Assembly (NCBI GenBank): GCA_051294905.1
Contig: CM119372.1
Location: forward strand, 29,698,001 to 29,762,000
Direction of reading: 5' to 3'
From: Botryllus schlosseri
Lineage: Eukaryota
DNA: 64,000 bases
The notes beneath the pieces are model-generated. The model worked only from the letters and a program-made list of their open reading frames with translations, made no database searches and had not been told where the DNA came from. Positions 1-39,018 of the stretch are shown here, piece by piece (positions within the stretch are counted from its first letter, which is position 1; every line of letters starts with the position of its first letter). The position numbers and the translations under genes are program-made.

Positions 1-7
1 AGAGTTG

Positions 8-30
8 GGTACTTGTGAAATAAGTGCCCG
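8..30 (+). repeat. Left terminal inverted repeat (23 bp, starts GG)
   Basis: GGTACTTGTGAAATAAGTGCCCG, immediately after agagttg; imperfect inverted match to 38988-39010. Confidence 0.8.
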
Positions 31-296
31 GAGGTCTAGGCGGCAATAGTTGTTGCACCATAAAATGGGTGTGTAGTAGGATAGTAAGTGTTTTACATGT
101 ACATTGAAATGAGGGTGAAAAAATAACTAGGTCTGGTAAGGAACAAGTGAAAAAAATAACCCTGTCATAAGAATAACACGGGATTAAAATATGAGAGAGT
201 CAGTACACATGAAACGACAAGAAAAAGGGGGGTTTGATCCGCTAAAGACGATGGGGAGTTGATCGACGCCACATGTCGTATTATTTACTTGCGCAG

Positions 297-1246
297 ATAC
301 GCGGAAAAGAACATACAATGTGTTGAGTTTGGTCGAATCGGGTGCACTACTAAACACACAAGATTGTGTACTATTTCTGAGAAATCACGGGTTGTTGGTG
401 CAGAAGATGAAATGCAAGCGATGTAAAAAAATAATGAAAGAAGAAAATACGTCGACAGGCGACGATGGGTTTAGGTGGCGATGCAACCCCTGCGATACTA
501 CGGCGACTATAAGGAAACACTCGATATTCGCAGGAAGCAAGGTAGAACTTCCCAAATTGTTAATATTATTCTACTTTTGGGCCCATGACGCGTTGCAAAC
601 CCAAATTGCGCATGAAGCCGAGATTAGCCAGCGTTCAACGGTAACCTGGTGCGGCCGATTGCGAAAACTTTGTACGGCCGAATTTCACAGGAATAAGCGA
701 CGTTTGGGAAATGAAGGCGGCTGTGTGGTCATTGACGAAACGCACTTAGCTAAACGCCGGACTGCCTCAGACAAGGGACCAGCCGTTAAAGCCATTTGGG
801 CGTTTGGGGGCATAGATAAAGCTACCGGAGAAATGTTCATTGAGATAACTTCTGACAGGACTGCCGAAGTATTTCGAAAACTCATAGTAGAAAATGTGGC
901 GGAGGGGTCCACAATTCTAACCGATGCTTACCCTTCTTACAAGGGCATAGAGAGCTGGGGGAAGGGTTATATACACGGTGTAGTGGACCACTCCCGTTGG
1001 TTTAAGGACCCTCGGACAGCTTTTTGTACTAATGAAATCGAGGGGGCCTGGGGCCAGCTTAAATATCACTTACATAGGTCTCGTGGGTTAGCACGTCACC
1101 TTTTGGCCGATTACGTAGGGGAGTTTTTGTGGAAACGTCAACATCAAAAGACTGACCGATTCTTGGCACTCCTGCGCACCATACACAATGACCCACGGTA
1201 TAATTTTGACAAATTTGATGGGTCTCCTGTATTACCACAATTGTGA
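297..1246 (+). CDS. Merlin/IS1595 (ISXO2-like) DDE transposase 1
   Basis: Zn-ribbon CKRC...WRCNPC, HTH-like segment, catalytic VVIDETH / ILTDAYPSY / HGVVDH...TNEIEGAW, all intact. The frame is open upstream of 320 (TRKRTYNVLSL resembles RKRRNLFNL of transposase 2) but has no ATG before 407. Acceptor-like ttatttacttgcgcAG ends at 296. Confidence 0.92.
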
Positions 1247-1375
1247 ACCCCGCTATAAGGTTCCAGGACGGAAATGACGACATCTGTTATTTTGTGTTTT
1301 TACAGACGGTAGTCTAGGGCTAGTGCGCGATTATATTTAATTCATGACGGGGCGAGAACCACCACTATCCGTACC

Positions 1376-3892
1376 ATGGACCTCCTTCCTCATTCTCTGT
1401 CTATCCTTATTGGTATCATTTGTACATCTGATTTGTTGCTGCATACGGCGGCGAAAGGCATGCACGGACTCGCAGATCCTGTAACAGGTAGAGCACGATC
1501 TTTCACTCAGGGGACGCTAGGTGAACTACGGGGACCCCTGCCTGATGAATGGATCACCTTAAATGATACACAATGGGAGGACTATCACTTGATGAGCATC
1601 TTCAATAAAACGGCGGAGCGACATGTATATAGACGGCCTGAGTTGTTTTACAGTAAGTCATTTGGTTACGTAGTGGCTGAACGATTTTCATTACAACAAA
1701 TGGCGTTTCCACATGGAAGATATTGGTCAAGCGTACAAGAATTTGAACGCACCTGTCTATGTCAGCGGCACCTGGGTCAAATTACGCCCAACATTTCCTA
1801 TGATGTTCTTAAACAAACGAACCTGTTCGTGCGCCCAATAGGATCTTATAGGATTCGCTGGTTCTGGAATGGGGACCAATACATGTCGTTTCATGACCTT
1901 GGCAAGAATTACTCTATGTTTGCTCTTACCAAATTTAAACTAATTATGATGAGACTATTCGAAAGTTATTCAGCTGTTGAAGCTTCATGCCGTCAAAAGC
2001 CAATGGGAGATCGGGACAGAGCCGAAATGAATGAATTGAATAAGTATAATGCCAGTAGCAATAGTTTTACACAATGCTGGCATCTAGTACAAAAAAGAGC
2101 CTACCGGGGCACCTATTGGCAACAATTGTACTCCTGGAGGGAAAAAGGTATCATAATAGGAATCTGTACAAGGTGTGATTTTAGAGGAGTTATCTCTGCC
2201 CTGGAACCAAATAAGGCAGATATAATCATCCAAGAAATAGTAATGACTACAGTAAGTGATTGGCAGTATGTGCGCAGTCCGTTGATACCATGCCGGGCCC
2301 AGGGGGGATGGATTAATCAGGATTGGTTTGAGCACTTATGGCCAGGGGGTGCTGTAATAGCCCATTCGTGCAACTTCTGGCCAGGAATGAATACCACTCT
2401 ATGGGGTGATCTACCAACGACAAATTTCCCCCCCAGAGTAAAATGGATACAACCGTCTTTTCCAAATCTGGATCACAGTGTGTATGCTAATCATGGCAAT
2501 CAGGGCATGAGGTGGAATAACCTTTTTGATGGTGTGCCGACTAGGTTTAGGGCATCTACATCAACATGGGTACCTTTTTCCAGGCCTATGTGGAAATACT
2601 TCCCCTCTCTTACTGCATCGGATGAAGCATGTAAAAATAGAATATCACATAACCAGGATTTGTGTCGCGACCCTGTGGGTGGACCCATTTTGAAGGCAGC
2701 CTTTTGGGACCATGTTCATTTTGATCCGGAGCTAAACTGACCACGCTTTCCAGGGGGTCCAATAGAAATTAAAGGTGAATTGGTATCAGGAAATACCGCA
2801 CAACGGGGAACGCGTAGAAGGCGTAAAAGGTTCCTGTCCGGACTGATATGTTTAGTATTCGCTGTGATATCCACGATCGCCGTCGTTGCGACAGTTTCAT
2901 CCCAGTTACATGAAGAGACGGTGGATCTTAGCCGACAAATAAATAATAGAATGACACAGGCCACGCAGAGGTCCACTGCACTAGGAAGGAAGATTAACGA
3001 ACTCTCTCTACTGCAAACAGCTCAACGACAAAAACTGGATCAAACGATCGCTACCATGGAAGTAAGGGCATCACTAACAAATAAACGACTTGTACTAATG
3101 GAAAAGTACATTGAAAGAAACCGACAAATGATAGTACGACAAGCCACAGCATCTCTGACCTCTTTTCAGAACTATAAGGAAATGAGTGACGCCGAACTAG
3201 CCATCGACCGATTGGTTTTGGACGAATTGGCTAATTTAACTGGCAAGTTAATATTTGACTCCAGCAAAGTATATCTCACTAAAATCCGACAAGGAACATT
3301 GCGGATAAAAGAACATGCTCAGCAATTAACAGCCTATAGGGACTCTTACATCAATGAGACGAATGACATTGGTATGGAACTACGTGCTAATCGTATCAGT
3401 CTAGATCAAGCCCAACAGAATGTGGATTTGGGTTTACAAGTTTGGAGAGAAGATCTGAATAAGAGTGTGTACATGAACATTTCTGACTGGCGATATGAGA
3501 ATATTACAGTGAAGCCTTTCGAATTTGTTGGAGGAGAAGAATTTATGAAGAACTTTGGCCAGACAATAGAAGAAATTTCACAAAATGCCGGCAGTTTGAT
3601 AAAAACGATAGGAGATAGCACAGGAGATCTACTACAAGATGGACTTGGCTCGGTCGGTGGTATATTTAGTAAGGGATTGAGTGGTCTTTTTTCCGGATTG
3701 GGGTCCGTGTTAATGCCGGTGATTTTGATATTGGGGGCTGGGATCATCCTGTTTTGTTGCTGTCGTTATAGCAATCTCTGCTGTCCTAAGTTGAAATCTA
3801 AGGTACAAAGGCGGAACACGAATACTCAGTTGACAATGTACATATCATCGGTACCAACCTCCGTTAAAACAGCCAAATCGACAAGAATGTAG
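1376..3892 (+). pseudogene. env: Envelope/fusion glycoprotein (SU-TM), one reading frame interrupted by a single TGA at 2738-2740
   Basis: ORFs 1376-2740 and 2780-3892 are in the same frame. N-terminal hydrophobic signal, N-glycosylation sequons, RRRRKR furin site followed by hydrophobic FLSGLICLVFAVISTIAVVA, heptad-rich region, Gly-rich membrane-proximal segment, TM VLMPVILILGAGIILF and CCC. Confidence 0.8.
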
Positions 3893-3978: not shown

Positions 3979-6900
3979 ATGAATCGTTACCTTAAAATAT
4001 GGATGGTGCTGGCAATAACCTTAACACTACACCGAGGATATCTGCAAACTCAGGGCCAATTATTGCCCCTATCTGCCATGCGTGTGGTTCCCAGGATAGC
4101 ATTTAATCTTACAGGATGGACAACGTTCCGGTATCAAGGTCTCAGATACATCCGCCTTAATCGACTATTCAAATTAAACGAGAGTTGGCCAATAGGTGAA
4201 ACGGAAAATAATTTTCCAATATACGAAGAGACGCCCGAATTTGGTCCAACACGAGCTAGCCAAGATCGATTGTACAAGTTATTTGCACCCTCGGGGTCTG
4301 ACAAGAGGTATTGGAACAATGTTAGACAATACGAAAGAGAATGCGGGTGCAATCGGAAACTATCAAGAATATCTCCCGATATTACGTTGGCAGCCTTTAC
4401 CAGAACCACAACATATCGTCGAAAGAATAACTTTGGTTCAGTACATACATGGAAGTATGTAGTAGGAAGGGAAGCACACGGCACTATGGCTGTGCCAGGT
4501 CCGATCCTTCGGATGATCTCTCCTAATGCTACTCCACAAGTTACTATACACCAGCTGTTGACAGTTTACAAGTTATCAGTAATGAACCTCTTGGCACAAT
4601 ATGCAACAGTAACAGCAAGGTGTCAACAGCATTCGGAAGGAATCGAGGGGTGGAAGGTCGACAAAGGCGAATTTAGTGTATGCGTACTCGAAAATATTGG
4701 CGGGATGCGATGTATAGGATGTGCATATTATCCAGACAATCGGGCAGTGAATACACTGTCCAGAGACTTTGTGTTCATGGAAATAGATAACAGCATTAGA
4801 GGACCAGGAACAAGAATGCAGGAAACCTATTCTTACAGTCAATGGCCAGCGGGAGTCAAGCTACCCAGGCTACATCATGATATAATTTGGCTGAAAGCTC
4901 GCAACGAAACAGGCCCCAGGGAGAGGCCAGCAAACTTTGATGGTCATACTTGGTTTAGATTGAGGATTTACGCCCTTCGCGAACATCTAAATAATGATAC
5001 TCAACGGATAATGGGGAAGAAAAATTTTCCGACTATGTTGCAAGGCAGCATAGAATGTGAACGCAAGAAAAATAAGAAGGTTTGTCGTAATTCAATAGGA
5101 AGTTTGAAGACGGCCTTGGCCTTTAAGGAAGTGTTATATGATCCATATACAAATCAATCCGTGTATGCAGATCATAGCAATGGTCGCTTACAAATTGCAT
5201 CCCCAATACCTGCAGGTCAGGAATCTCCACTCAAAGTATGGCCTAAGAATCTACCCGATTGTAAGCAACCCGGTAGATTAGGCAACCTTATCCTGACTGC
5301 ATCATTCAAAAGCAATGGGCAAAACACAAGGAATATTGACTATTATCTAGCCCGCCTAGGAATGTTTTACGTAGAAGTAACGAAAAGGCGTTTACGCCAG
5401 TTATCTTTGCCCATATATAAAATGCGAAAAAACCTGGGGAGGTTGGACAGGTCCATAACTGGTAAAGAGATGGAGTCTCTAAGTCAGGCGCTACGGTCAG
5501 CGTTGACACCTCAGAAACTGAGTAGGATAAATAAAGAGTTACTGAGCTATATGTCAACGCGCAAGCTCATAGAGGCGCAGCTTCATGATATACGGATGTT
5601 CCGACCTGGTGTGGCCTACAAAGCCATAATATGCGCTGGAATATTGGTGTATACGCCTTATGCCTATAATGACAATAACGAAGTCAGAACTAACTCTGAA
5701 ATGCCATTAAGTACCGCGGAATCAATAACGACAAAGGCTGTAAGTTACGAAGGAACCACTCGAAAAGTGTCTCCTAGCTCCGTAATGCCACGAAGTAACG
5801 CGGAAGCAATAACGACAAGGACTGTAAGTTACGAGGGAACCACTCGAGAAGTGTCTCCTAGTAGCGAGACTGGTATATGGTTTAATTTCACTCCTGTTGT
5901 AACGACTCCAGAACCCACTGCGACAATGGTAAAAACCATAACAATTGCTGAGGAAAGTGTAAGAATGACGAATCAATACGATACTAACCACTATAACTAC
6001 GATTATATAGAAGGTTATGACGAAGGATTTGACTATGCCGGTTATGACAATAATACTAGTTTTCAAGACTCTGGAAATTACTACTACAATTATTATGACG
6101 AAGACGTAGAATATGATGGTTCATTAACACGCAGGCCCATACCCGTAGCTTATACTACGAATTCCACAAATATTATTGAAACTACAATGGCGTTACCAAT
6201 GATTGAAACTCCAACGTCGACCAAAAATACTCAATATACGATCGAGTTAACAACGGATACAACAATTTCCACGCCAAGAACGTCTGCACATGCGTTGGAT
6301 AGCATTACGACCGCATTATCAACTACTACAATCACACCAAATACTAGAGAGTTGACATCGGCCATTGTTATTTCCGGAACGACTTCATCGACACCACTCC
6401 CAGCCATATTGACTACTGTGCAGTCCTCACGCGAAAATAACACTAGCCCAAGACCAATTGCATCTATTACTACATTCTTAACTGCAGTGAAAACTGTTAG
6501 TGAGCAAGAAAGACGCAGGACGAGTCCCACAAATATTTTCACAACTGTGGAATCGTCTACGGCTATATCAACACAGATGGACGCTCAGAAAAGCATGGGT
6601 ATTGCTGCGACAGGAGTCACCTTTTCCAAAAGCGAGTTAGCAACACTTATACCAATGGGGAGCACTGCAAACTCAAGGTTACAATGGAATACCATGACTT
6701 ATCAAACACCCACAAAAAACGGTGAAATGATAGGCTCCATATCAGTGCCAATAAAGAAAACGCCCCAGATTACGCAGACACCTGAGTCTTATATACAATT
6801 GAGTCGTCACACAAATCAACTCATGGAGACGACACCGCCAAGAGCGCATGTCAATGTGCTGTTTGATACAACCCAAGTAGCAACGACAGTCGAAACGCAC

Positions 6901-7467
6901 CAAAATTTTGTCACCAGCAAGTCCCGCTCTAATACAGAACCAGATAATTTAAACAAAGAGCAAGACCTACAGGTAAAAACTAAATCAACATCAATGCTTT
7001 CATCAGGGGACTATCAGAGCGAACCCACATCAGTAAGTAAAAATGATGTGATCAGAAGTTGGAAGAGTACTTCCAATAGTGCACTTTCTTCAATTACACC
7101 CTCTATCGAAGAAGAAGGAAAAACTACACTCAGTATACCGCATACCTTACCTACGGCCAAATATGACAGACTGGACCGAATTACATTTGACTTCTATGGA
7201 CGACTACACAATCTACAAGAAATGGAACAAGGATATGCAGCAGGTAAAAATATTGTTGATATTAACAATAGAAAGGATTTAGAAAAATCACTTAACAATC
7301 ATGCCTTGATCTTTGCGGTTAGCGTAACAGCCATGGTAGAATGTATGTATTTATGTTATGCGAAATGCGGGAGAGTTGCAGCTAAAACTTATCTTAGAGA
7401 GGTTATTCGGCGGAATAACCAAAAGACGTATATTACAGCAGTAACATTGCATGAAAAACTGAGATAG
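3979..7467 (+). CDS. Type I membrane glycoprotein: env-SU paralog domain + Tyr/Asp cluster + Ser/Thr mucin stalk + C-terminal TM
   Basis: Signal peptide; RYWNNVRQYERECGCNRKLSRISPDIT aligns to env RYWSSVQEFERTCLCQRHLGQITPNIS; Thr/Ser-rich ~5680-7150; hydrophobic ALIFAVSVTAMVECMYLCY near the C-terminus. Confidence 0.75.
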   Translation: MNRYLKIWMVLAITLTLHRGYLQTQGQLLPLSAMRVVPRIAFNLTGWTTFRYQGLRYIRLNRLFKLNESWPIGETENNFPIYEETPEFGPTRASQDRLYKLFAPSGSDKRYWNNVRQYERECGCNRKLSRISPDITLAAFTRTTTYRRKNNFGSVHTWKYVVGREAHGTMAVPGPILRMISPNATPQVTIHQLLTVYKLSVMNLLAQYATVTARCQQHSEGIEGWKVDKGEFSVCVLENIGGMRCIGCAYYPDNRAVNTLSRDFVFMEIDNSIRGPGTRMQETYSYSQWPAGVKLPRLHHDIIWLKARNETGPRERPANFDGHTWFRLRIYALREHLNNDTQRIMGKKNFPTMLQGSIECERKKNKKVCRNSIGSLKTALAFKEVLYDPYTNQSVYADHSNGRLQIASPIPAGQESPLKVWPKNLPDCKQPGRLGNLILTASFKSNGQNTRNIDYYLARLGMFYVEVTKRRLRQLSLPIYKMRKNLGRLDRSITGKEMESLSQALRSALTPQKLSRINKELLSYMSTRKLIEAQLHDIRMFRPGVAYKAIICAGILVYTPYAYNDNNEVRTNSEMPLSTAESITTKAVSYEGTTRKVSPSSVMPRSNAEAITTRTVSYEGTTREVSPSSETGIWFNFTPVVTTPEPTATMVKTITIAEESVRMTNQYDTNHYNYDYIEGYDEGFDYAGYDNNTSFQDSGNYYYNYYDEDVEYDGSLTRRPIPVAYTTNSTNIIETTMALPMIETPTSTKNTQYTIELTTDTTISTPRTSAHALDSITTALSTTTITPNTRELTSAIVISGTTSSTPLPAILTTVQSSRENNTSPRPIASITTFLTAVKTVSEQERRRTSPTNIFTTVESSTAISTQMDAQKSMGIAATGVTFSKSELATLIPMGSTANSRLQWNTMTYQTPTKNGEMIGSISVPIKKTPQITQTPESYIQLSRHTNQLMETTPPRAHVNVLFDTTQVATTVETHQNFVTSKSRSNTEPDNLNKEQDLQVKTKSTSMLSSGDYQSEPTSVSKNDVIRSWKSTSNSALSSITPSIEEEGKTTLSIPHTLPTAKYDRLDRITFDFYGRLHNLQEMEQGYAAGKNIVDINNRKDLEKSLNNHALIFAVSVTAMVECMYLCYAKCGRVAAKTYLREVIRRNNQKTYITAVTLHEKLR
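5701..5862 (+). repeat. Two in-frame copies of an 84-bp (28-aa) unit in the mucin-like ORF
   Basis: MPLSTAESITTKAVSYEGTTRKVSPSSV / MPRSNAEAITTRTVSYEGTTREVSPSS. Confidence 0.9.
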
Positions 7468-28367: not shown

Positions 28368-28372
28368 GAGGA

Positions 28373-29415: not shown

Positions 29416-29473
29416 TGTTTCCCTTTCTTTTTATGTGTGTAAGTCTTACCGAATAATATAGAATCTACACCGA

Positions 29474-30065: not shown

Positions 30066-30521
30066 ATGGGGGATAAAATTGTTAGAGTAAAGCATGAACT
30101 TGACGTTTTCTTCGATTCCTTTGAAAAAAGATACGAACACAAAGACTTCAGCAGATGGGCTGCAACAACACGGGATGAACTGGAAACATTTATGACACCT
30201 TACTTGAGGATTTGCAACCTAAGAATATCCGATAAACTGTTCGATGCGCTATATAAAAAGCATTTAGCCATCTCCCGCATGATATTGTTTGAAAATTACG
30301 AACATGCCAAGTTTTGCTGGTTTGTTTTCTGTGTTGGATTACATCCTGCCTCGGATGTCATACCTGAAGAATGGGTGTTGGAAAGAATGCCTTGTTCTGA
30401 TAGAACCGGATTTTGTATTTATACCACTGATAAACTCTTTAATGATACTTTTCCCTCTGATGTAAGAGCTGCTATACTGATACATAAAATGAAATGTAAT
30501 GGCTGTAATTATGAACAATGA
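30066..30521 (+). CDS. Cargo ORF, paralog family C (copy 3)
   Basis: Same length (151 aa) and motifs as 27912-28367. Confidence 0.75.
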   Translation: MGDKIVRVKHELDVFFDSFEKRYEHKDFSRWAATTRDELETFMTPYLRICNLRISDKLFDALYKKHLAISRMILFENYEHAKFCWFVFCVGLHPASDVIPEEWVLERMPCSDRTGFCIYTTDKLFNDTFPSDVRAAILIHKMKCNGCNYEQ

Positions 30522-30609
30522 GTGCATGGATGGTATATTGTATTTTTTGCCAGGTTGAATGTCTATTAATCATCTGTGACGTGTATGACAACTATAGACC
30601 CTTACCTGG

Positions 30610-31089
30610 ATGATTAATTTCTTTCAGAAAATTAAAAGTATGAATAACGCGGAAGTAAATGATAAAGGTGATGTTGATGTCACCAAACTAGTTGGATCTA
30701 ATGTGGCGGAACAAGACTTGATCTTTTATTTTTGGTTATTCAAAGAACGATATGAAGCAGGAATACCTCCCTCTCATAGATGGTACGAGTGGTCAAGGAC
30801 CCCACCCAAATATATCAAACTTGGATTGAAATGTTTTTTCAAACGAGTTAAAGATACCCTTTCTGATGAGAAGCCCCTTGTTATTGACTACCAAGGAATA
30901 CTAGAAAACCATAAAATGATAAGAAACATGGCATCTGGAAATTATGAAAAGGCTAAACTTTTGTGGTTCCACTATATGGCTAGAATGCATCCTATGGAAA
31001 ACTTGATCAAGGATGAATGGGTGAAGGAACAAGCTGAATCCACGGAACCCTTTTACCCCGAGGATACTGTAAATGTCCTAGTCCTATGA
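30610..31089 (+). CDS. Cargo ORF, paralog family C (copy 4)
   Basis: Paralog of 28373-28768. Confidence 0.75.
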   Translation: MINFFQKIKSMNNAEVNDKGDVDVTKLVGSNVAEQDLIFYFWLFKERYEAGIPPSHRWYEWSRTPPKYIKLGLKCFFKRVKDTLSDEKPLVIDYQGILENHKMIRNMASGNYEKAKLLWFHYMARMHPMENLIKDEWVKEQAESTEPFYPEDTVNVLVL

Positions 31090-31380
31090 ATATGGTTAAG
31101 TTCATGAATAATATTGATTTCATGTATTCCTATTGCATGTGTATAAAGCGTTATAACTGGCCTACGGGATATAGAACGGTCAGAACCTCTATTGCGTCTT
31201 GCATAGAGTCATTTTATTGTATTTTGTCGCACAGAGAATTGATTCCGTCACGTTCACAGCTTATTGAATGGTTTGGTTAACCTACATTCAGAAATGTTTT
31301 ACAGTTTGTACTGATTATTGCCAATCGGTTGACTGCGAATTATGTTTAATACTGAGGGGCCTCGTCATCCCTACAGTATG

Positions 31381-31389
31381 TATATAAGG
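31381..31389 (+). promoter_or_regulatory. Candidate TATA box of the genomic (LTR) promoter
   Basis: TATATAAGG in the non-coding interval ~840 bp upstream of the PBS; position is plausible but unproven. Confidence 0.35.
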
Positions 31390-32224
31390 CGTTATACACT
31401 GCTACGCCCTTACCTTTAAGCAGGACCCTAGGGACCTTATCACCCCCTAGTTTAACGAAAACAAAATGCCGAACTTTACGGTGAGAATCGTTATTGAAAA
31501 AAAATAATGAAAAACAATATAAAATTTATAAAATTTTCTTTTACATAAGCCAAACATGGAATGTTTGAAGTCCATTTTTATGGAAACACTAAAATTATAC
31601 TGATAACTGAAACTATACTAGAGAACTCATCAGCAGTGTTCAACTAAGCAACACCTTGTTAAGGGTAGTATCGAACAGGCTGATTAATAGGCCTATGGTA
31701 ATAATAATTGTACTGACGATTTGACGTCCTTAATGCTGATTGTGTTCTTGTATTATGTGATGAAATATTTTTGAAAAGATCAGCTTTTCGGCAGGACAGG
31801 CCGTCGCATGAATTATATGCGTAAACAAACCTTGGAGTATTGAAAATGTTTGTTAATTGTGTATGATGATGTATAGGTTAAACCATGCCTTGTGTTATAA
31901 TTGATGAATGATGTGTATGCCAATTTTAACCAAGCTTTGCATAGAGTTACCACATTTCCGTCTGCGCAATTAACTATTGGAGTATTTGGTTGTATTAAGG
32001 TTCCAGATTATCAGTAGATAAGGGTAGATTAAAATTCTGGACCCCAGGGTCATTGTCAACTTGAGAAGAAACAATCCTACAACTGTTGTTGCTCCAATCA
32101 CCATTTACAGACGTCGTCAAGATACTAAAGCAAACGAAAGGCAACGCTTTACTAGGAAGTAACCCGAACAAGTGTGGACTACTCGCATAACAATCGTTGT
32201 GGAGCTGCACTCTAAAAACAAAAT

Positions 32225-32242
32225 TGGTGGCCAGTACGGGGA
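32225..32242 (+). promoter_or_regulatory. Primer-binding site complementary to tRNA-Ile(AAU)
   Basis: TGGTGGCCAGTACGGGGA is the 18-nt complement of the 3' end (UCCCCGUACUGGCCACCA) of animal tRNA-Ile(AAU) as I recall it; it lies after ...AACA and ~310 bp before gag. Confidence 0.88.
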
Positions 32243-32271
32243 CCTTCCGGTGTTCAGACGTTGACCAATCG

Positions 32272-32541
32272 ATGCTTTCTAAGACGACCATCGTAAAACT
32301 TGTACTTGTCGTATCCTTGCTTTCATCGTCTGTATCTCTCCTGATAATATTGGCAGCAATTTATCTGCACGTATCACCTGGAGCGCTGTCTAATCTGTTG
32401 AACGTATTTTTGGGATCTAATAGCAGCGAATCCACTGCTTACGTCCAACCCACGAATACGCCGCAGAGATCTACAATATATTTTAACGTGTCTTCGCGTG
32501 ATCTACTACCTTCTGTCAATAGTACTTTATCCGGTCAATAG
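32272..32541 (+). CDS. Small leader ORF (89 aa) with signal-anchor/TM segment between PBS and gag
   Basis: ATG at 32272; hydrophobic IVKLVLVVSLLSSSVSLLIILAAIYL; NSS/NVS/NST sequons; stops 8 nt before the gag ATG. Confidence 0.5.
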   Translation: MLSKTTIVKLVLVVSLLSSSVSLLIILAAIYLHVSPGALSNLLNVFLGSNSSESTAYVQPTNTPQRSTIYFNVSSRDLLPSVNSTLSGQ

Positions 32542-32549
32542 GAAGGGCA

Positions 32550-35500
32550 ATGCGAAGGATGTTGAAAGCATTCAAAAGGAAAAAGTCGTCAGAAGCGACG
32601 GATGAACTCAAACAAGGTATTACCTTGCTTAAAGCGACACAAAAACGCCATGAAGATGTACGGCGACAAGAAAGACAACTGGCTAAGGACGTGGCTGAAC
32701 AAACAGAACTATTAAAAGAGGTAAAAACAGCTCTGCCGGAAACCATGAAAGGGTTAGAAAAGGCAAAAAAGGAGGTTCGAAAAGCTCAAGCGGACCTCAA
32801 AGCTGTTTGTGATGCCACAACAAAAGTTAGCGGGAAAGTCTCTACCGAGGTGCTAAATGACATTCTTACTTCAGAGTTTGAGCTCGGAAAGTCGCATGCA
32901 CAAGTTACGCGAGATAAGACCCAATCTCCCGTTTCGACGGTACTTCCAAATGCACCGGAATATGACCCTCCGGCATACGTTCCCCTCGATGAGCAGATGT
33001 CGGGTTACGTAAAACAAGGGCCAACGATGACGGTTCGTAAGGGTTTGGATTGCCACACTGTAACGGCCGTCTATCCCACGCTCCCGAAGCCCGAGTCAGT
33101 CGCATTGTCCGACTCTTTAAAGGAACCAGCGTCCTGTTTCCCTGTGGGCAGTGGTGTACGCGCCAAACACAAAAATGGAAACCCGGCAACGGCGGGAACA
33201 AGGACGGAACCTGCAAAAAGTTCCTTGAGTAAAAATAGGGGATATCAAGGTGGGCAAGAACGCCGCAATTTGGAGACAGAATCCCGTATAAATGCGGACG
33301 GCGCTTCCCAACGGGTAACCTTTCATAGTCCAGTCGAGGAACAATCTGACGCAGAAGACAGTGAAGTCGATTTTAATACTCGAATAAAGCGTCTTTCCCA
33401 AGACATAAGAGATAATATAAGGTCTCTACGGGGCGGTGCCAGCTCTCTGGATTCCGCGGAAGAATCTCGCGATATCTCTCGTTCTCCTGATACACCTCGC
33501 GCTACCTCCACTCCAAAAGAGTATGGGGGGAGGACTAGGCAACAACAACAACAACTACACGAACACTCTGGTATTTCAGCCCCATTACTCAATGTGTCTG
33601 CTAAAATCCAATCAGAAAAAGAAATGCTTCAGCTTATGATGGACCCAGGAGACATGCCATTACTAAAGTGGATGGAAAATTCGATGCGAAGAATACGCCA
33701 CGGTCCTGGAAATACGGATGTGGATGTTATTTTGGCTAATGCGCTGCAGAAGAAATTGAGGGCTGCTGGCCGACACAAACAGGCTACCCAACTGGGAAAT
33801 TTTTTTAATACCAATTCGGGAGAAGCAGAATGGGAATCGGTGATGCGATCTCTTTCCTTATCCAATCCCCAGGGTTTGGTAAATGATGAAAAGATCATTG
33901 GAGAATTCCGCAGAAACTATCGCTGGGAGGATGAGCCGCTACCTCTGTTGAATAGCGCTTTGAAGCAACTAGAAATAAACATGGATAGTCTTATTGAGGA
34001 TAATCCGGATGGATTGCGTCTTTTCCGAAATTTACGACAACGCCTTCCAGAAGCGCTCAGACTGATGTTGCGAGGCTGGGAAGAGGATAAAACTTGGCGG
34101 TACGTTGCGGAGGAACTACAACTTGTTTGGAATTCCGAGTTTCTGGATGAGCAAGAAACGCGCCCCAGGTATCAGGAAACAAAAGAAGTACGTGATATGA
34201 AACCGTCCTTGCCTCCTGTACACATTTACAATGTTCAACCTGCGGGGCAAATAGTGCACAGTTATCCCACTCATGGAAACGAGGACAGACAGCTCAACAC
34301 CCCTCCTCCACCTGGTGAAACACCACCACCGCCGGTGGTACAATCACCCTCGCCCCTGCAACCACTGAATAACTTTGGGGGGTCAACATCTCCTGGACCA
34401 CCTAGAGTGACCCCACCACGCCAACCTGACAATACAGGACAGGTTCCGATACGACGTCGTAATCCACAGCGTAATGCTCGCATTAATCGACCCCCTACTC
34501 ACATCATGAACGGTAATGGACCTGGTAGACGAGGACAATACTCAAGGGCCAGGCCAGTACAACAACAGAATGGGCGTACGGCATCAACGGGACCTAACGA
34601 ACAGCCAACGAGAATAACAAGATCTTCACGTGCTAGTCAAGGACCAGGAACCTCAAACCGAAGTCCGCGAATGACAAACACACAAGATTCCGGGATGGGT
34701 ACTGACAGCTCACAGATTACTCCGTCTAGCAGCCAGGAAGCCCGCAACATTGCTGACAGCCAAGGTGAGCGATACAATTTTCTTGGAAACCCGAATATTT
34801 TCGCTCCTCTAGGCTTGTATCTAAATCCCACTCAGGGACAATCGCTGTCCGTCTGTTATTACTGTAAGGCACCGGGACATCAATCCCGTAATTGCGTGGC
34901 TAAATTCATACTTTGGCTAAACGATAAGGTCCTTGCCAAAGATGAGGAATTAGGTTGGATAATTCGGGGGCGAGCGAGACCCGTACCGCCTCATGTGAAG
35001 GCATCGGCAGAACGTAATTGGAAACCTTTTCTTGAGAGAAATGGGATTCAGACAATTGAAGGTTTGGACCGGTATCTGGCTTTACATGGCTCTCCTTCTT
35101 TCGTGCAAAGAACCGCTCTGTGCGAAGCTTATTACGATACCCGGCCAAAAAGCCGAGATAGAACCCACTGGCATGACAGGGATCAATGGGGTCCTCATGG
35201 ACCACCTGCACGTTCCTCTGGGGGAAATATCCAAGTGGCCTGGGCGAAACCTCAATATCATGAGCGCTCGCGTCGTTATGATGCTTCATATTGGACAGAC
35301 GATGAGCTAAATCAAGGGGTACGACTTTCAAAAAAACGCCATGGGGTGCTGATTGATCCGGTGAATCAGCTCCCAGACAAATTGATATTTCAACACATAA
35401 AAACTGTACATAACTCTTCTTTACCCTTATTTACATTTCTTGATATGCCGGATGACCCTCTACAGCCCGATTTTACGGAATTGTTTGGTAGCCAACTGTT

Positions 35501-36974
35501 GTATTTGGTTGATACAGCAACTGGTACGAAATTCCTAGCTGACACGGGGAGCATCCCCAATTTAATAATGAAAAAGGTCGTTATAACTAAATATCCACAA
35601 AGCTGGGAGGAACGTCAACCAATAGATATGGAATTGACTGGAATAGGCGGCTCGTCCCAAGTGGACTCCTTTGTAGTGATTGATTTTGATGGACTGTCCG
35701 TTCCCTTTGTGACCGGACCAGGAGTCCCACTTAATATCATAGGGCTGAAATGGATTGAGGAAGTCCAACAATTACCAGGCATAACTACGGAATTCAAAAC
35801 CCCGTCTAACGCAAATGTGGAGTTGTCTTTAGTATCACTACTTGAAGAGAATCTTTGTGATCAGAGTAACGGAACCAAAGTCGAAAGCAGTATTAGCTAC
35901 ACTGCAACCGACGATGGGTTGATGGATGCTGCAAATCAAAGTAGCGTGGAGCGGAAAATTGCCGCTGGCGCGAGTACCGAGATGGAAATGACCACTGGTG
36001 CGAGCGACGAGTTGACATTAGCAACTAACGTCACACATAACCCATGGGAATCTATAGGTGTTGAGACAGGAATGCCTGCTGACACCGTAAATGAAGACGT
36101 CGAGCGTGGAATCCCCGCTGGCGTAAAGTTGGACCTGCACGAGAAAACGGGTCCTAAATGCTTGCGTGGATGCACTTGTCCGAATAACCTTAATGATTCG
36201 GCCCATAGCTGCATGACGACAGCCACAGTAATGAGTACTTTCCCAGAAGGTTCAAATCAAGCAGCAATTGCCGGTCAACCGGATACACATCCGGAAATGT
36301 CCGACAAGGAGTCTGGGGATTTTAGGATGCACGTCTCCCCAGAAAAAGGGTCCCCGGCGGAAAAAGAGTCCGTCGGCGTGGCGGTAGGTGCGGGCACGCG
36401 CCGAGATCAGAGGCCTACATTGAAGGACCTCACCCTCTCTCCACCAACACCGAAAACCCGGTCATCACGAATCTCAAACCAGCCTATGGTTGGGCCAGTT
36501 ACTACGTACGTTTTACAGAAAGACACTCACTCACGCGTCAAGACGGAGCTCGAAAATCTCTGCGCACAATCTGTAGCGCTGGCCAAACTCCCATACAAAC
36601 CTCCTGATCTGACGACTCCAGAAAATACCATTATCGCTGATGATGTCTGGAAAGCTATCTACGCACCGTTCGCGTCCGAACTCGAGGACCTACGGGGCCA
36701 CCTTGGCGCTCTACAAACCATGAAATACAAATGCGACATCGAGCTTAAAGATCCCTCGACGAAACCATTTGTGTCTGGGCCTTATAATCTGAAGGGGGAG
36801 GGCCAGGCAAAGGCATTGAAAGAAGCGGTAGATAACTTCCTGGACTTGGGCGTCATTGAACGAGGTTTTGCCGAATGGAAGTTGGCTATCTTCGTGGTCC
36901 CTCAGAAAATGAATGAGAGACAAAAACAGGAGGACGGATGGAAGCAAGCCTGGAGGGTAGTACAGAATCAATAG
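32550..36974 (+). CDS. gag-pol: Gag-protease-RT N-terminus polyprotein (Ty3/gypsy- or retrovirus-like)
   Basis: N-terminal coiled coil, PPAY (32967) and YPTL (33072), CCHC knuckle CYYCKAPGHQSRNC (34854-34895), protease LADTGS (~35538), RT start PYNL...LDLGVIE...WKLAIFVVPQK...WRVVQN. Confidence 0.9.
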   Translation: MRRMLKAFKRKKSSEATDELKQGITLLKATQKRHEDVRRQERQLAKDVAEQTELLKEVKTALPETMKGLEKAKKEVRKAQADLKAVCDATTKVSGKVSTEVLNDILTSEFELGKSHAQVTRDKTQSPVSTVLPNAPEYDPPAYVPLDEQMSGYVKQGPTMTVRKGLDCHTVTAVYPTLPKPESVALSDSLKEPASCFPVGSGVRAKHKNGNPATAGTRTEPAKSSLSKNRGYQGGQERRNLETESRINADGASQRVTFHSPVEEQSDAEDSEVDFNTRIKRLSQDIRDNIRSLRGGASSLDSAEESRDISRSPDTPRATSTPKEYGGRTRQQQQQLHEHSGISAPLLNVSAKIQSEKEMLQLMMDPGDMPLLKWMENSMRRIRHGPGNTDVDVILANALQKKLRAAGRHKQATQLGNFFNTNSGEAEWESVMRSLSLSNPQGLVNDEKIIGEFRRNYRWEDEPLPLLNSALKQLEINMDSLIEDNPDGLRLFRNLRQRLPEALRLMLRGWEEDKTWRYVAEELQLVWNSEFLDEQETRPRYQETKEVRDMKPSLPPVHIYNVQPAGQIVHSYPTHGNEDRQLNTPPPPGETPPPPVVQSPSPLQPLNNFGGSTSPGPPRVTPPRQPDNTGQVPIRRRNPQRNARINRPPTHIMNGNGPGRRGQYSRARPVQQQNGRTASTGPNEQPTRITRSSRASQGPGTSNRSPRMTNTQDSGMGTDSSQITPSSSQEARNIADSQGERYNFLGNPNIFAPLGLYLNPTQGQSLSVCYYCKAPGHQSRNCVAKFILWLNDKVLAKDEELGWIIRGRARPVPPHVKASAERNWKPFLERNGIQTIEGLDRYLALHGSPSFVQRTALCEAYYDTRPKSRDRTHWHDRDQWGPHGPPARSSGGNIQVAWAKPQYHERSRRYDASYWTDDELNQGVRLSKKRHGVLIDPVNQLPDKLIFQHIKTVHNSSLPLFTFLDMPDDPLQPDFTELFGSQLLYLVDTATGTKFLADTGSIPNLIMKKVVITKYPQSWEERQPIDMELTGIGGSSQVDSFVVIDFDGLSVPFVTGPGVPLNIIGLKWIEEVQQLPGITTEFKTPSNANVELSLVSLLEENLCDQSNGTKVESSISYTATDDGLMDAANQSSVERKIAAGASTEMEMTTGASDELTLATNVTHNPWESIGVETGMPADTVNEDVERGIPAGVKLDLHEKTGPKCLRGCTCPNNLNDSAHSCMTTATVMSTFPEGSNQAAIAGQPDTHPEMSDKESGDFRMHVSPEKGSPAEKESVGVAVGAGTRRDQRPTLKDLTLSPPTPKTRSSRISNQPMVGPVTTYVLQKDTHSRVKTELENLCAQSVALAKLPYKPPDLTTPENTIIADDVWKAIYAPFASELEDLRGHLGALQTMKYKCDIELKDPSTKPFVSGPYNLKGEGQAKALKEAVDNFLDLGVIERGFAEWKLAIFVVPQKMNERQKQEDGWKQAWRVVQNQ

Positions 36975-38737
36975 AAGTACCCCCACCTCTTGTACCGGAC
37001 GTAAAGCAGCTCGCCCAAGGCAGAGAAGTGCTTTCTCTACTAGATTTGAAGAAGGCCTATTTCCACATGGATGTAACGGAAAGATCTAAACAATATGTGG
37101 GTATAGCCATCAAGGGGATGCATGTAAGATGGCGTAAAATGCCGATGGGGCTTAAAACCGCTGTGGCTCTTTGGAGTGCGAATATGCAGGAATGCGTGGT
37201 GAAACCTATCACGGAAAATTATCGTAAATACATGAAGCAAAATGGTCGGTCGGATGAGGAGAATGCGACGCCTATGGAGGCCTACATAGACGACATTTTT
37301 CTTAGCACAAAAACGGTAGAAGATCACCTAATACTACTACGCATGGTATTTGAACAACTCGCCAAGATGAAACTGACGGTAAGCATCAATAAGTGTTTCA
37401 TTGGAAAACGAAGGGTGAACCTTTTGGGGGCAACCTTGACGGGGAAAGAAATTGAGGTTCAGCCCGAACGAATAAGGGCTTTACGCGAACTCTCGCCACC
37501 CCATAATGTATACGAGTTAAGGGGGTGGATTGGCGCGCTTCGCTATATCTCGGAGCATATACCTGAGTTAAGTTTGAAGCTGGCCAAATTCGATGCGCTA
37601 ACAGGCAAGGTCCCTGCGACACAAGGACGAGTGACGCCTGTGCTATGGACCGATGAATTACTGCAGGATTTCAAAATGACACAGGCAGCTCTTGATGATG
37701 CTAAGGTCTTGTACCATCTAGATCCAAATCTTCCCATTTTTGTGGAAACAGACGCCTCAGATGTTGGATTTGGGTCAATCATTTTCCAGACGGAAAAAGG
37801 GTGTAAACCGCCTTTCGAAAAGGTTTACCCAATCGCTTATTACAGTCAGAAGTGGGTAACTCCAGCGGCAAAAGCCTATGATCCGTGCACAAAGGAATTG
37901 AAAGCATTAAAGGATTCGGTTGAAAAATGGCAGTCAATGTTGAGAGCCTTATCCTTTACAATAATCACTGATAATACTGGGGTATTTGGGCTCCTCAAAA
38001 GAATGACGGATAAAGCGAAAAATCCAAGCCCAAAACCCCTGATTCAAAGGTGGCTCAATCATCTCGCAGGATTCCAAATAAAAGAGGTAATTCATTTAAG
38101 TACGATGCAGGTATTTACGTCGGATGGATTGTCTCGATCTTATTGGATGGAAATGGCTGCGGGAGAAGATGATCCACATGTTTGGGCAACGATTCCTAAG
38201 GAAAAAAGCGTTCCGTACCAGCAAAAAATACCTCGACTGGAAAAAATACAGCACAAATTGATGGCCCATTGTCGACACGAGCCTTGTAACAAATCGGTGG
38301 ATGGGTACCACCCCTGGGAAGATATTTGTGAGATCATTAAAATAAAAATCGGGGTGGAAATGGAAATTGAAGAATTAAAAGATGTCATGAAAAGGTGCGA
38401 CAGAGCAATTGTCTCAGAAAATGGATTGGCGGCTGCCCACGGGCATACACAAGGGAAGCCTCCTCAATATTGTAAATATGAAGGTAACGAGGTGTTGTAC
38501 CACATGACGACCGAAAACAATGCAGGACAGATAATGTCCGCGGGCATTGAACGGATGAACAGGAGATTCATTCATTTGAGCAAAACGCTAACGAAGAAAA
38601 GTAAAAGGCGGAATGTGGTAATTTGCCTGAAAGCAGCAGATCTAAGGAATGAGGGACTCGTATTGCTGCAATCAAACGTACAAGACGTGGTATTGTGTGA
38701 AGGCCCTATACCACCCACGATCATACAAAAGATGTAA
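36938..38737 (+). pseudogene. pol: Remainder of pol: RT, RNase H and ~200-aa C-terminal domain; no integrase; out of frame with the upstream ORF
   Basis: LDLKKAYFHM, MPMGLKTA, YIDD (37283-37294), FVETDASDVGFG, KELKAL, ITDN, SDGLSR. No HHCC or D,D35E motif before the stop or before the right TIR. Confidence 0.9.
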
Positions 38738-38838
38738 AGCTGTTTTTGGCAGAGTGTAAATATGTGACATAATAAGGGTGAACGGACAAAATCCCTATAA
38801 TGGGAGCAAACGGACAAAACTGAAACGTCGTAACTAGA

Positions 38839-38861
38839 AAAAATGCTGAGTCAGCATTTTT
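38839..38861. promoter_or_regulatory. Palindromic Maf/AP-1 element (T-MARE) with A/T flanks; CRE TGACGTCA at 38961-38968
   Basis: aaaaaTGCTGAGTCAGCAttttt has 11-bp perfect arms and matches the T-MARE consensus TGCTGA(C/G)TCAGCA. Confidence 0.55.
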
Positions 38862-38987
38862 ATATCTCGTGTGGAAAAACGAGAGAACAAGAAGAAAAAA
38901 GGATAAGTGATAGAATAAACAAGGCGATTGAAATAAAGGATCATGGGGAATCATAATGAATGACGTCAAGTAGAGACACGAGTTAAG

Positions 38988-39010
38988 CGGGCATATACTG
39001 CACTAGTTCC
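38988..39010 (-). repeat. Right terminal inverted repeat (23 bp)
   Basis: CGGGCATATACTGCACTAGTTCC followed directly by aagagttg. Confidence 0.8.
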
Positions 39011-39018
39011 AAGAGTTG
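39011..39018. repeat. Target-site duplication, right copy (aagagttg); 7 nt of the left copy visible at 1-7
   Basis: The 7 visible bases left of the left TIR (agagttg) equal 39012-39018. The first base of the left copy lies outside the window. 8-9 bp TSDs are typical of Merlin. Confidence 0.8.

What the first reader, a model, noticed from the sequence alone, without database searches (positions are those of the whole stretch)
1..39018. Giant Merlin-retrovirus chimera: a 39-kb TIR transposon enclosing a circularly permuted, integrase-less enveloped retroelement
Seen: TIRs plus TSD enclose transposase-env-glycoprotein-PPT-[interval]-PBS-gag-pol. A normal provirus runs LTR-PBS-gag-pol-env-PPT-LTR; here the 3' half precedes the 5' half and there is only one PPT-to-PBS interval. 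Joining 39010 to 8 restores PBS-gag-pro-RT-RNaseH-[TIR junction]-DDE transposase-env-PPT, with the Merlin enzyme where integrase normally sits. Inference: the element replicates by reverse transcription through a one-LTR circle and integrates/excises at internal TIRs using a Merlin transposase. This is analogous to the piggyBac-herpesvirus fusion Teratorn but involves a retroelement. I know of no described element with this design.
Basis: partly seen in the sequence, partly recalled or inferred. Interest (0 to 1): 0.97.

Follow-up and report, generated by a model that had tools for sequence, protein, structure and literature searches.

The report
Giant Merlin transposon carrying retrovirus-like genes
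A 39-kb mobile element, probably in a sea-squirt genome, sits between the end repeats of a Merlin cut-and-paste DNA transposon yet carries a full retrovirus-like gene set with no integrase and no LTRs, a combination I found described nowhere.

Summary
Window 8-39010 (39,003 bp) is bounded by imperfect inverted ends (GG...CC, 17 of 24 bases). These are the two best matches in all 64 kb to the left ends of related elements. They are flanked by the same 7 visible bases of an 8-bp duplication. Inside, all 21 ORFs of 150 aa or more are on the + strand: Merlin transposase, a class-I-like envelope gene, a second membrane glycoprotein, a 9.7-kb ORF-free stretch holding a host repeat, a 14-kb cargo block (LRR protein, a second Merlin transposase, IAP, E2, a small paralogue family), then gag-protease-RT-RNase H fused to a Tpt1-like domain. 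There is no retroviral integrase and no LTR pair. Relatives support the unit: four have the same left terminus before transposase-env, with unrelated flanks or contig ends. Transposase-free relatives read gag-pol-env. Not shown: the PBS, the PPT, any circular form, or any role of RT in copying the element. The "interval" is a gene block, not an LTR. Verdict: a real composite element and apparently a new design. The retro-plus-transposase life cycle is plausible (about 0.4) but unproven.

The parts
1..7 (.). left copy of the target-site duplication (7 of 8 bases; the first base lies before the window)
   Evidence: AGAGTTG equals 39012-39018
8..31 (+). left terminal inverted repeat, starts GG
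   Evidence: 17/24 to the reverse complement of the right end; 16-19/24 to the left ends of L010, L004 and L011, 13/24 to L013; best TIR-family match in the window
140..163 (+). subterminal direct copy of the TIR motif
   Evidence: third-best TIR-family match in the window; present at the same place in L004, L010 and L011
275..296 (+). conserved pyrimidine-rich stretch ending GCAG (splice-acceptor-like), 24 nt before the conserved transposase N-terminus
   Evidence: same spacing in six elements; frame open from the AG; in 4 of 6 no in-frame ATG precedes the conserved N-terminus
320..1246 (+). Merlin-type DDE transposase 1 (Cys-rich N-terminus, DDE_Tnp_IS1595 domain)
   Evidence: Pfam PF12762 E 4e-10; D139, D202 and E241 invariant in 7 sequences; relatives 54-77% identical always followed by env
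1376..3892 (+). envelope gene (receptor-binding-like half, furin-type site, fusion-subunit-like half); interrupted once by an in-frame stop in this copy
   Evidence: signal peptide, RRRRKR, hydrophobic fusion-peptide-like stretch, C-terminal anchor; one uninterrupted 791-aa ORF in L003; homologous to the env of L001; no Pfam family
3979..7467 (+). second membrane glycoprotein (1162 aa), N-terminus paralogous to the first half of env
   Evidence: signal peptide, C-terminal anchor, 10 N-glycosylation sequons; paralogy E 3e-10; same position in L003
7468..17132 (.). stretch without long ORFs
   Evidence: no ORF of 80 aa or more other than the edges of its two neighbours and one 109-aa minus-strand ORF at 7643-7972
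8929..10575 (-). nested host repeat
   Evidence: 66-80% identical, inverted, to the flank at 52980-56760
17133..31089 (+). cargo block of about 15 close-packed, intron-free ORFs, all on +
22182..23231 (+). leucine-rich-repeat protein
   Evidence: LRR_8 E 4e-63
23919..24866 (+). Merlin-type DDE transposase 2, internal, with no TIR nearby
   Evidence: PF12762 E 3e-18; 38% identical to transposase 1; 72% orthologue P0175 in another sample; no TIR motif near it
26015..27765 (+). IAP gene (three BIR domains and a RING); read in two overlapping frames here (one frameshift)
   Evidence: BIR E 2e-34 and 2e-22, RING E 2e-9; best named relatives are tunicate (Styela clava 44%, Ciona 36%); a single ORF in L044
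27912..28768 (+). two members of a four-member family of small proteins
   Evidence: paralogy E 1e-24 and 5e-21 with the two ORFs at 30066-31089
29474..29929 (+). ubiquitin-conjugating enzyme E2
   Evidence: UQ_con E 2e-47; an E2 also lies next to the transposase in L044
30066..31089 (+). the other two members of the small-protein family
31090..32549 (+). leader before gag, with two TATA-like motifs (31142, 31381), a small hydrophobic ORF (32197-32541) and a PBS-like 18-mer starting TGG at 32225-32242
   Evidence: consensus-level matches only, function not shown
32550..38737 (+). gag-protease-RT-RNase H-Tpt1-like gene; read in two overlapping frames (one frameshift, inside the RT domain)
   Evidence: L001 has protease to Tpt1 in one ORF
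34854..34895 (+). CCHC zinc knuckle of gag
   Evidence: zf-CCHC; motif found
35358..35771 (+). aspartic protease region (DTG)
   Evidence: aligns to the RVP-positive part of L001 pol; LADTGS motif
36597..38074 (+). reverse transcriptase and RNase H
   Evidence: RVT_1, RT_RNaseH and RT_RNaseH_2; solved structures of a caulimovirus polyprotein, foamy-virus Pol and Ty3 at E 2e-16 to 4e-12; YIDD motif
38243..38704 (+). Tpt1/KptA-like (RNA 2'-phosphotransferase family) domain at the C-terminus of pol
   Evidence: PF01885 E 6e-11; Tpt1 structures E 1e-7; also in P0001-P0003
38987..39010 (-). right terminal inverted repeat, ends CC
39011..39018 (.). right copy of the 8-bp target-site duplication (AAGAGTTG)

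Best explanation
Window 8-39010 is one composite mobile element. It has the ends and the enzyme of a Merlin-superfamily DNA transposon fused with the gene set of an enveloped, integrase-less, LTR-less retrovirus-like element, and it also carries host-derived genes (IAP, E2, LRR and others). Shown: it entered this site the Merlin way, with GG...CC inverted ends and an 8-bp duplication. The transposase-env pairing and the left terminus are conserved in relatives down to 43% transposase identity. The retroviral genes are laid out as a circular permutation of the gag-pol-env order of transposase-free relatives. Inferred: the Merlin enzyme does the job that integrase does in a retrovirus. The element probably also exists in a form with its two ends joined (circular or head-to-tail). 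From that form one long + strand RNA could cover every gene, serve as messenger (with splicing onto the conserved acceptor before the transposase) and be copied back into DNA by the element's own RT. My estimates: about 0.9 for one composite element, 0.85 for Merlin-type insertion, about 0.4 for the RNA/RT stage through a joined form.
For: The two ends are the best TIR-family matches in 64 kb, and they flank a 7/7 repeat. This fits the Merlin hallmarks listed in PMC8101967: terminal GG, TIRs of 24 bp or more, often imperfect, 8-9 bp duplications, DDE_Tnp_IS1595. The left terminus recurs. L010 has 266 bp of unrelated flank and then the TIR. L011 starts exactly at the TIR and L004 two bases before it. 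L013 has a LINE-type RT fragment, then a TIR-like motif, transposase and env. L003 reads pol (72% identical), 190 bp, transposase (55%), env, second glycoprotein. Transposase-free relatives read gag-pol-env. No integrase and no LTRs are present. All 21 ORFs of 150 aa or more inside the element are on one strand and the cargo genes have no introns, as expected if the whole element passes through one RNA. The protease, RT and CCHC motifs are intact. Transposase 1 lacks its own start codon before its conserved N-terminus in 4 of 6 elements and has a conserved acceptor-like site 24 nt upstream. No conserved donor is visible in the 290 nt between the end and that site, which fits a first exon lying beyond the end, reachable only in a joined form.
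Against: There is no direct sign of a circle, a junction read or RNA. L003 has no recognisable TIR pair between pol and transposase, and whether it comes from DNA or RNA is unknown. The PBS could not be tested and the PPT is not distinctive. In this copy RT carries a frameshift and env an in-frame stop. L044 has IAP-transposase-E2-bHLH-env with no pol within 5.6 kb, and L045 has the transposase with other cargo, so this Merlin lineage picks up genes readily and can do without an adjacent pol. Cut-and-paste alone explains the TIRs and the duplication. 39 kb would be very long for a reverse-transcribed genome. The left flank is only 7 bases because the window starts there.
Confidence: 0.6

Rival explanations
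1. A giant cargo-carrying Merlin DNA transposon that moves only as DNA. It captured a retrovirus-like gene set (perhaps from a circular or tandem copy, hence the permutation) along with host genes. RT plays no part in copying the element, and gag, pol and env are passengers or serve only occasional particle formation.
For: The TIRs and the 8-bp duplication need nothing more than the transposase. The element holds two Merlin transposase genes. Related Merlins carry varied cargo without a nearby pol (L044, L045). RT and env each have one break in this copy. GC content differs between modules: cargo 33-39%, gag-pol 46-48%, transposase-env 42-45%.
Against: All 21 long ORFs share one strand, which DNA-only cargo capture does not predict. 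Transposase-env adjacency is kept across deep divergence. The pol-transposase-env contiguity in L003 matches the retroviral order. The catalytic motifs of protease and RT are kept. The transposase lacks its own start codon.
Confidence: 0.33
2. Chance juxtaposition or nesting of independent, truncated elements (a Merlin transposon, a retroelement fragment and a gene cluster) that only looks like one unit.
For: The parents exist separately: gag-pol-env without a transposase (L001, L002, L005-8) and Merlins without retroviral genes. 9.7 kb without ORFs and a nested host repeat lie between the two halves.
Against: The only two TIR-family sites in 64 kb bracket the whole 39 kb and are flanked by the same 7 bases. 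Every ORF has the same orientation. L003 links pol to the transposase directly. Env follows the transposase in five relatives with a close or moderately close transposase.
Confidence: 0.04
3. An artefact of assembly or of where the window was cut: the window starts inside a tandem array or a misjoined repeat, and the true element is an ordinary gag-pol-transposase-env unit.
For: The window starts only 7 bases before the left end, which suggests a contig or scaffold break at a repeat boundary. L003 shows the unpermuted order.
Against: Past 39018 the sequence does not run into another left end. It continues into unrelated DNA with host repeats. L010 and L013 show the same left end against unrelated flanks in other samples, and two contigs stop at that end.
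Confidence: 0.03

Closest known systems
Teratorn (piggyBac-like transposon fused with an alloherpesvirus, teleost fish; PMC10175614, PMC6431247)
   Same: A giant TIR-bounded element in which a cut-and-paste DDE transposase gives a virus-like gene set a way into chromosomes. It carries extra host-like genes.
   Different: The transposase superfamily is Merlin, not piggyBac. The partner is a reverse-transcribing, gag-pol-env element, not a double-stranded DNA virus. The element is 39 kb rather than 41-182 kb. All genes are on one strand. The 2023 review lists no retroelement case.
Merlin superfamily DNA transposons (Feschotte 2004, as summarised in PMC8101967)
   Same: DDE_Tnp_IS1595 transposase, ends starting GG and finishing CC, imperfect TIRs, 8-bp duplication, presence in ascidians. 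The nearest named relative is a Ciona intestinalis protein at 33% identity.
   Different: The Merlin families in that survey are a transposase gene between TIRs. This element is 39 kb with about 20 further genes, including gag-pol-env and a second, divergent transposase.
Envelope-carrying Ty3/gypsy elements of invertebrates ('errantiviruses'; PMC13524379)
   Same: gag, protease-RT-RNase H of the Ty3/retrovirus type, and an envelope gene. Such elements are found in tunicates among other animals.
   Different: Those have LTRs and an integrase, with F-type or gB-type envelopes. This element has no LTRs and no integrase, has a Tpt1-like domain on pol, and its env matches no Pfam family.
Caulimoviridae (plant pararetroviruses)
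   Same: No integrase, no LTRs in the DNA form, and all genes on one strand. A solved caulimovirus polyprotein is the best structural-database match to this RT-RNase H (E 2e-16). By established knowledge they are transcribed from a circular DNA into a longer-than-genome RNA.
   Different: They are plant viruses of 7-8 kb without an envelope or a transposase, and RT identity is only about 25%. A circular form is not shown here.
DIRS-like retroelements
   Same: Retroelements without a DDE integrase and without ordinary LTRs, thought to pass through a circular DNA (established knowledge). Relative L001 is flanked by long inverted repeats.
   Different: DIRS elements use a tyrosine recombinase and make no duplication. 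No such enzyme was found here, and an 8-bp duplication is present.
Bacterial IS elements that insert from a circle with abutted inverted ends (copy-out, paste-in; established knowledge)
   Same: This is the working model for how a joined form with the two TIRs side by side could be inserted. Merlin is the eukaryotic kin of the IS1595/IS1016 group.
   Different: No circle junction has been seen for this element, and I know of no evidence that Merlin enzymes work this way.

Membership tests
Merlin superfamily (DNA transposon) | DDE_Tnp_IS1595 transposase with an intact DDE | tested here: met
   PF12762 E 4e-10 and 3e-18. D139, D202 and E241 are invariant in 7 sequences, with 63 residues between the two D; the survey reports about 50-70.
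Merlin superfamily (DNA transposon) | Terminal inverted repeats of 24 bp or more starting 5'-GG | tested here: met
   The ends read GG... at 8 and ...CC at 39010, with 17/24 identity. They are the two best family matches in the window.
Merlin superfamily (DNA transposon) | 8- or 9-bp target-site duplication | tested here: met
   AAGAGTTG at 39011-39018. Seven of its 8 bases are visible at 1-7 and the first is cut off by the window start. No empty site could be examined.
Merlin superfamily (DNA transposon) | Several copies with the same ends and different flanks | tested here: inconclusive
   Related (not identical) elements share the left end with unrelated flanks (L010, L013) or with contig ends (L004, L011). 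No second right end was found, and the source genome is not in the protein collection.
LTR retrotransposon / retrovirus (Ortervirales with integrase) | gag, aspartic protease, RT, RNase H | tested here: met
LTR retrotransposon / retrovirus (Ortervirales with integrase) | Long terminal direct repeats | tested here: not met
   Inside 1-39018 there is no direct repeat longer than 88 nt (one adjacent pair inside the second glycoprotein gene, at 5690-5861), and none at the ends.
LTR retrotransposon / retrovirus (Ortervirales with integrase) | Retroviral-type (rve) integrase | tested here: not met
   No Pfam hit in any long ORF. tblastn with 17 integrase-bearing pol proteins finds only RT-RNase H.
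LTR retrotransposon / retrovirus (Ortervirales with integrase) | tRNA primer-binding site next to the 5' repeat and polypurine tract next to the 3' repeat | tested here: inconclusive
   An 18-mer starting TGG lies at 32225, but no tRNA gene is present in the window or the loci for comparison. Purine runs are not distinctive.
Pararetrovirus-like (Caulimoviridae-type replication) | No integrase, no LTRs, genes on one strand | tested here: met
Pararetrovirus-like (Caulimoviridae-type replication) | Circular episomal DNA transcribed into a terminally redundant RNA | not testable with these tools
   No reads or RNA data are on hand. L003 shows pol-transposase contiguity but no junction motif.
DIRS-like retroelements | Tyrosine recombinase; no target-site duplication | tested here: not met
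   No recombinase domain in any ORF, and a duplication is present.
Transposon-virus fusion of the Teratorn kind | One TIR-bounded unit holding a DDE transposase and a near-complete virus-like gene set, kept together in relatives | tested here: met
   The superfamily and the virus type differ from Teratorn, so this is a likeness in design, not membership.

The most novel reading that the evidence does not exclude
An enveloped, reverse-transcribing virus-like element of ascidians in which a Merlin transposase has taken the place of integrase. The DNA copy closes on itself so that the two Merlin ends lie side by side between pol and the transposase gene. From there it is inserted into, and cut out of, chromosomes. 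That would be a new order of retroelement defined by its integration enzyme (as LTR, DIRS, Penelope and LINE elements are), and at about 30-39 kb one of the largest reverse-transcribed genomes.
Probability: 0.4. Interest if true: 0.95.

Novelty: categorically new. Interest (0 to 1): 0.87.

Why it matters
Retroelements are classed by the enzyme that puts their DNA copy into the genome: retroviral-type integrase, tyrosine recombinase, GIY-YIG nuclease or LINE endonuclease. A retrovirus-like gene set that travels between Merlin ends with a Merlin transposase, and has neither integrase nor LTRs, would add a fifth solution. It would also be the first retroelement counterpart of Teratorn, showing that viruses and cut-and-paste transposons of quite different kinds can merge. 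The conserved cargo (an apoptosis inhibitor, a ubiquitin-conjugating enzyme, an LRR protein) looks like the host-manipulation genes of large DNA viruses. That raises the question of how much a reverse-transcribed genome can carry. The Tpt1-like domain on pol is a second unexplained novelty, shared by the wider clade. If the RT stage turns out to be absent, the element is still a new kind of giant gene-carrying Merlin transposon.

Tried and rejected
- **Other copies in the source genome.** Exact look-ups of eleven window proteins found none in the collection. No further copies or empty sites could therefore be fetched.
- **TIR pair in L003.** I looked between pol and the transposase by scoring against six known ends and by local alignment to the window's ends. 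Nothing rose above shuffled controls. Only a weak likeness to the subterminal motif was seen.
- **PBS.** No tRNA genes are present in the window or in 11 loci. The 18-mer is not found in relatives with up to 4 mismatches.
- **PPT.** There are 13 comparable purine runs, so I rejected it as evidence.
- **Other collections.** IMG/VR gave no transposase relatives. With pol it gave only 7-8 kb contigs 22-27% identical, probably plant pararetroviruses, which I left unexamined. The bacterial and archaeal genome collection gave nothing. Rfam gave nothing.
- **Envelope fold.** The single-sequence AlphaFold model of the fusion-subunit-like half had pLDDT 56 and showed three long helices. It was too poor for a fold search, so none was run. 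A three-sequence profile against solved structures gave only non-significant hits (influenza HA2 E 0.05, coronavirus S2 E 0.13-0.2). Pfam at E up to 5 gave nothing useful.
L002's env hits the alphavirus E1 family but is not homologous to the window's env. I dropped the class II idea for the window.
- **Hidden transposase in L001.** The 200-aa ORF between pol and env in L001 is not one (hhalign probability 1.6%).
- **Ends of transposase-free relatives.** A crude search for Merlin-like ends and duplications around L002 and L006 found nothing convincing.
- **A pol-transposase splice.** A donor overlapping the pol stop codon, spliced to the acceptor before the transposase, would not keep the reading frame. 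I dropped it.
- **Searches not made.** env, the second glycoprotein and gag were not searched in the large protein databases. The three searches went to pol, the transposase and the IAP.

Full report
**The observation**

The window has no N. All 21 ORFs of 150 aa or more between 1 and 39018 lie on the + strand. The 25 kb to the right holds only three such ORFs, on both strands.

The left end reads AGAGTTG then GGTACTTGTG.... The right end reads ...CACTAGTTCC then AAGAGTTG and runs on into unrelated sequence. The first 24 bases from position 8 match the reverse complement of 38987-39010 at 17 positions.

I scored every 24-mer of the window, both strands, against the left ends of four related elements plus the window's own two ends. 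The two termini score 17.8 and 17.3. A subterminal copy at 140 scores 14.0, and nothing else exceeds 13. Against the other five ends alone, the right end still matches 14-18 of 24. GGWACWWGTG occurs only at the two ends.

The seven bases before the left end equal seven of the eight after the right end. The eighth would lie just before the window. These are the Merlin hallmarks as summarised in PMC8101967: terminal GG, TIRs of 24 bp or more that are often imperfect, 8-9 bp duplications and a DDE_Tnp_IS1595 transposase. That paper also lists ascidians among the hosts.

**Contents, left to right**

- **Transposase 1.** A Merlin transposase.
- **Envelope gene.** It has a signal peptide, an RRRRKR site followed by a hydrophobic fusion-peptide-like stretch, long predicted helices and a C-terminal anchor. 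This is the layout of a class I fusion glycoprotein. Weak, non-significant profile hits to HA2 and coronavirus S2 point the same way.
- **Second glycoprotein.** A 1162-aa type I membrane glycoprotein whose N-terminus is paralogous to the first half of env.
- **ORF-free stretch.** 9.7 kb without long ORFs, containing an inverted copy of a repeat also found in the flank.
- **Cargo block.** About 15 close-packed ORFs: an LRR protein, a second Merlin transposase 38% identical to the first, an IAP with three BIR domains and a RING, an E2, four paralogous small proteins and several unknowns.
- **Leader.** 1.4 kb with TATA-like motifs and an 18-mer starting TGG.
- **gag-pol.** gag with a CCHC knuckle, a protease (DTG), RT (YIDD), RNase H and a C-terminal Tpt1/KptA-like domain.

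No retroviral integrase is detectable and there is no LTR pair.

**Breaks in this copy, counted only**

- env has one in-frame stop.
- gag-pol has one frameshift, inside the RT domain. L001 has that stretch in one frame, and L009 does not have this shift but has another elsewhere.
- IAP has one frameshift. It is a single ORF in L044.

All other ORFs are open.

**Relatives**

The closest pol relatives form a small clade well apart from ordinary Ty3/gypsy pols. Bit scores fall from 232 to 112.

Three kinds of relative lack any transposase and read gag-pol-env:

- L001, whose env is homologous to the window's and which lies between inverted repeats of at least 1.4 kb.
- L002, whose env is an alphavirus-E1-like protein instead.
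- L005-L008, the same element in several metagenomes, with the right flank differing between L005 and L006.

The transposase has few close relatives, all in short contigs from sequencing runs with neighbouring accession numbers. In each of them env follows the transposase. Their left ends behave like element ends:

- L010 has 266 bp of unrelated sequence and then the TIR.
- L011 begins exactly at the TIR, and L004 two bases before it.
- L013 has a transposase only 43% identical. There a LINE-type RT fragment is followed by a TIR-like motif, the transposase and env.

L003 is different. It reads pol (72% identical to the window's), 190 bp, transposase (55%), env, second glycoprotein. That is the order obtained by joining the window's right end to its left end.

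I could not find a TIR pair in those 190 bp. I also cannot tell whether L003 is DNA or RNA. It may be a junction of ends whose repeats have diverged or been lost, a transcript, or an unpermuted integrated variant.

In a rough neighbour-joining tree, L003 is sister to the group that has the terminus before the transposase. More distant branches (L013, L045) also have an end-like start before the transposase. This makes the terminus-before-transposase state the likelier ancestral one.

L044 shows a third arrangement: IAP, transposase, E2, a bHLH protein, then env, with no pol in 5.6 kb. The second transposase of the window has a 72% orthologue elsewhere, so it too is a maintained gene.

**Host**

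The IAP's best named relatives are from the ascidians Styela clava (44%), Ciona intestinalis and Clavelina lepadiformis. The nearest named Merlin protein is from Ciona. The host is therefore probably an ascidian. I took no contig for human.

**How it most likely works**

Shown: insertion of the whole 39 kb as one unit with Merlin-type ends and duplication, and long-term linkage of the Merlin enzyme with env and, at least in L003 and the window, with pol.

Inferred: the Merlin enzyme replaces integrase.

Three observations argue that the element also passes through one long RNA and a form with joined ends:

- Every gene is on one strand, and the cargo genes lack introns.
- In the integrated order, a transcript starting before gag would leave the element after pol and miss the transposase, env and cargo.
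- In six elements a pyrimidine-rich stretch ending GCAG lies exactly 24 nt before the conserved N-terminus of the transposase. The frame is open from the AG, and in four of six no in-frame ATG precedes the conserved residues. No conserved donor is visible in the 290 nt to the left. This suggests a first exon that lies beyond the left end, which exists only if the ends are joined.

None of this is direct evidence. A DNA-only giant Merlin transposon that captured retroviral genes remains a serious rival (about one in three).

**Comparison and novelty**

The element passes the Merlin tests. It fails two defining tests of LTR elements and retroviruses (LTRs and integrase) and the DIRS test (tyrosine recombinase, no duplication).

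In design it resembles Teratorn, but with a different transposase superfamily and a reverse-transcribing partner. It resembles pararetroviruses in lacking integrase and LTRs.

Full-text searches found no description of a Merlin-retroelement fusion or of a Tpt1-like domain on a retroelement pol. [quoted passage not shown] The library is not complete, so an existing description cannot be excluded.

- These implicitly show where those genes are interrupted. They were written before or while I recognised the interruptions as breaks, and nothing was deleted.
- I stopped, entered none of them in any tool and drew no conclusion from them.

Noticed in passing
window 38243-38704; also P0001, P0002, P0003: pol ends in a Tpt1/KptA-like domain (RNA 2'-phosphotransferase / nucleic-acid ADP-ribosyltransferase family). 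Of the Arg-His-Arg-Arg tetrad described in PMC6333775, the first Arg, the His and the last Arg align. The third Arg is replaced in the window and in all three Tpt1-bearing relatives aligned. I found no report of this domain on a retroelement pol.
   Followed up: partly
window 275-296 and the same place in L010, L004, L011, L012, L003: A conserved splice-acceptor-like site lies 24 nt before the transposase, and the transposase has no start codon of its own before its conserved N-terminus in 4 of 6 elements. The donor is unknown.
   Followed up: partly
window 219-232: The purine run AAGAAAAAGGGGGG lies in the left end, about 60 nt before the acceptor-like site. The A-rich core is shared by L010, L004 and L011. 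Its meaning is unknown.
   Followed up: no
L001 5993-7391 and 21338-22736: A transposase-free relative (gag, pol with a Tpt1-like domain, env) lies between inverted repeats of at least 1399 nt that are 99% complementary and are cut off by the end of the locus. No integrase or recombinase was seen. How this element integrates is unknown.
   Followed up: partly
L002 13428-14642: In another transposase-free relative the envelope gene is an alphavirus-E1-like (class II) protein (Pfam E 2e-12), not homologous to the class-I-like env of the window. Envelope genes have been swapped within this pol clade. The element appears to be nested in a Pao-like LTR element.
   Followed up: partly
L044 1-5665; L045 1-3572: Related Merlin transposases sit next to host-like regulators. 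L044 has IAP, E2 and a bHLH protein, then an env-like gene. L045 has a homeodomain protein. All are on one strand.
   Followed up: partly
window 27912-28768 and 30066-31089: Four paralogous ORFs of 131-159 aa with no Pfam family.
   Followed up: no
window 19284-20156 and 23296-23850: Two cargo ORFs give weak hits to the C-terminal domain of PWWP3A/B DNA-repair factors (E 3e-5 and 2e-3, below the Pfam cut-off).
   Followed up: no
window 50667-50842; 52104-54736; 51400-55400: The flank is repeat-rich. It has a 16-nt-period tandem array, a pair of 785-nt inverted repeats 92% complementary (a foldback or TIR element), and scattered GACTCGAGTC-type short repeats that also occur inside the element near 10.5 and 12.5 kb.
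   Followed up: no
L005-L008: One gag-pol-env element (pol P0005, without a Tpt1-like domain) is 99.7-100% identical in four samples from three sources. L005 and L006 diverge at one point on the right (L005:11198), so it has at least two insertion contexts. No LTR or TIR was seen.
   Followed up: partly
L025-L043: IMG/VR contigs of 5-8 kb (most 7-8 kb) have RT 22-27% identical to the window's pol. They are probably plant pararetroviruses and were not examined further.
   Followed up: no
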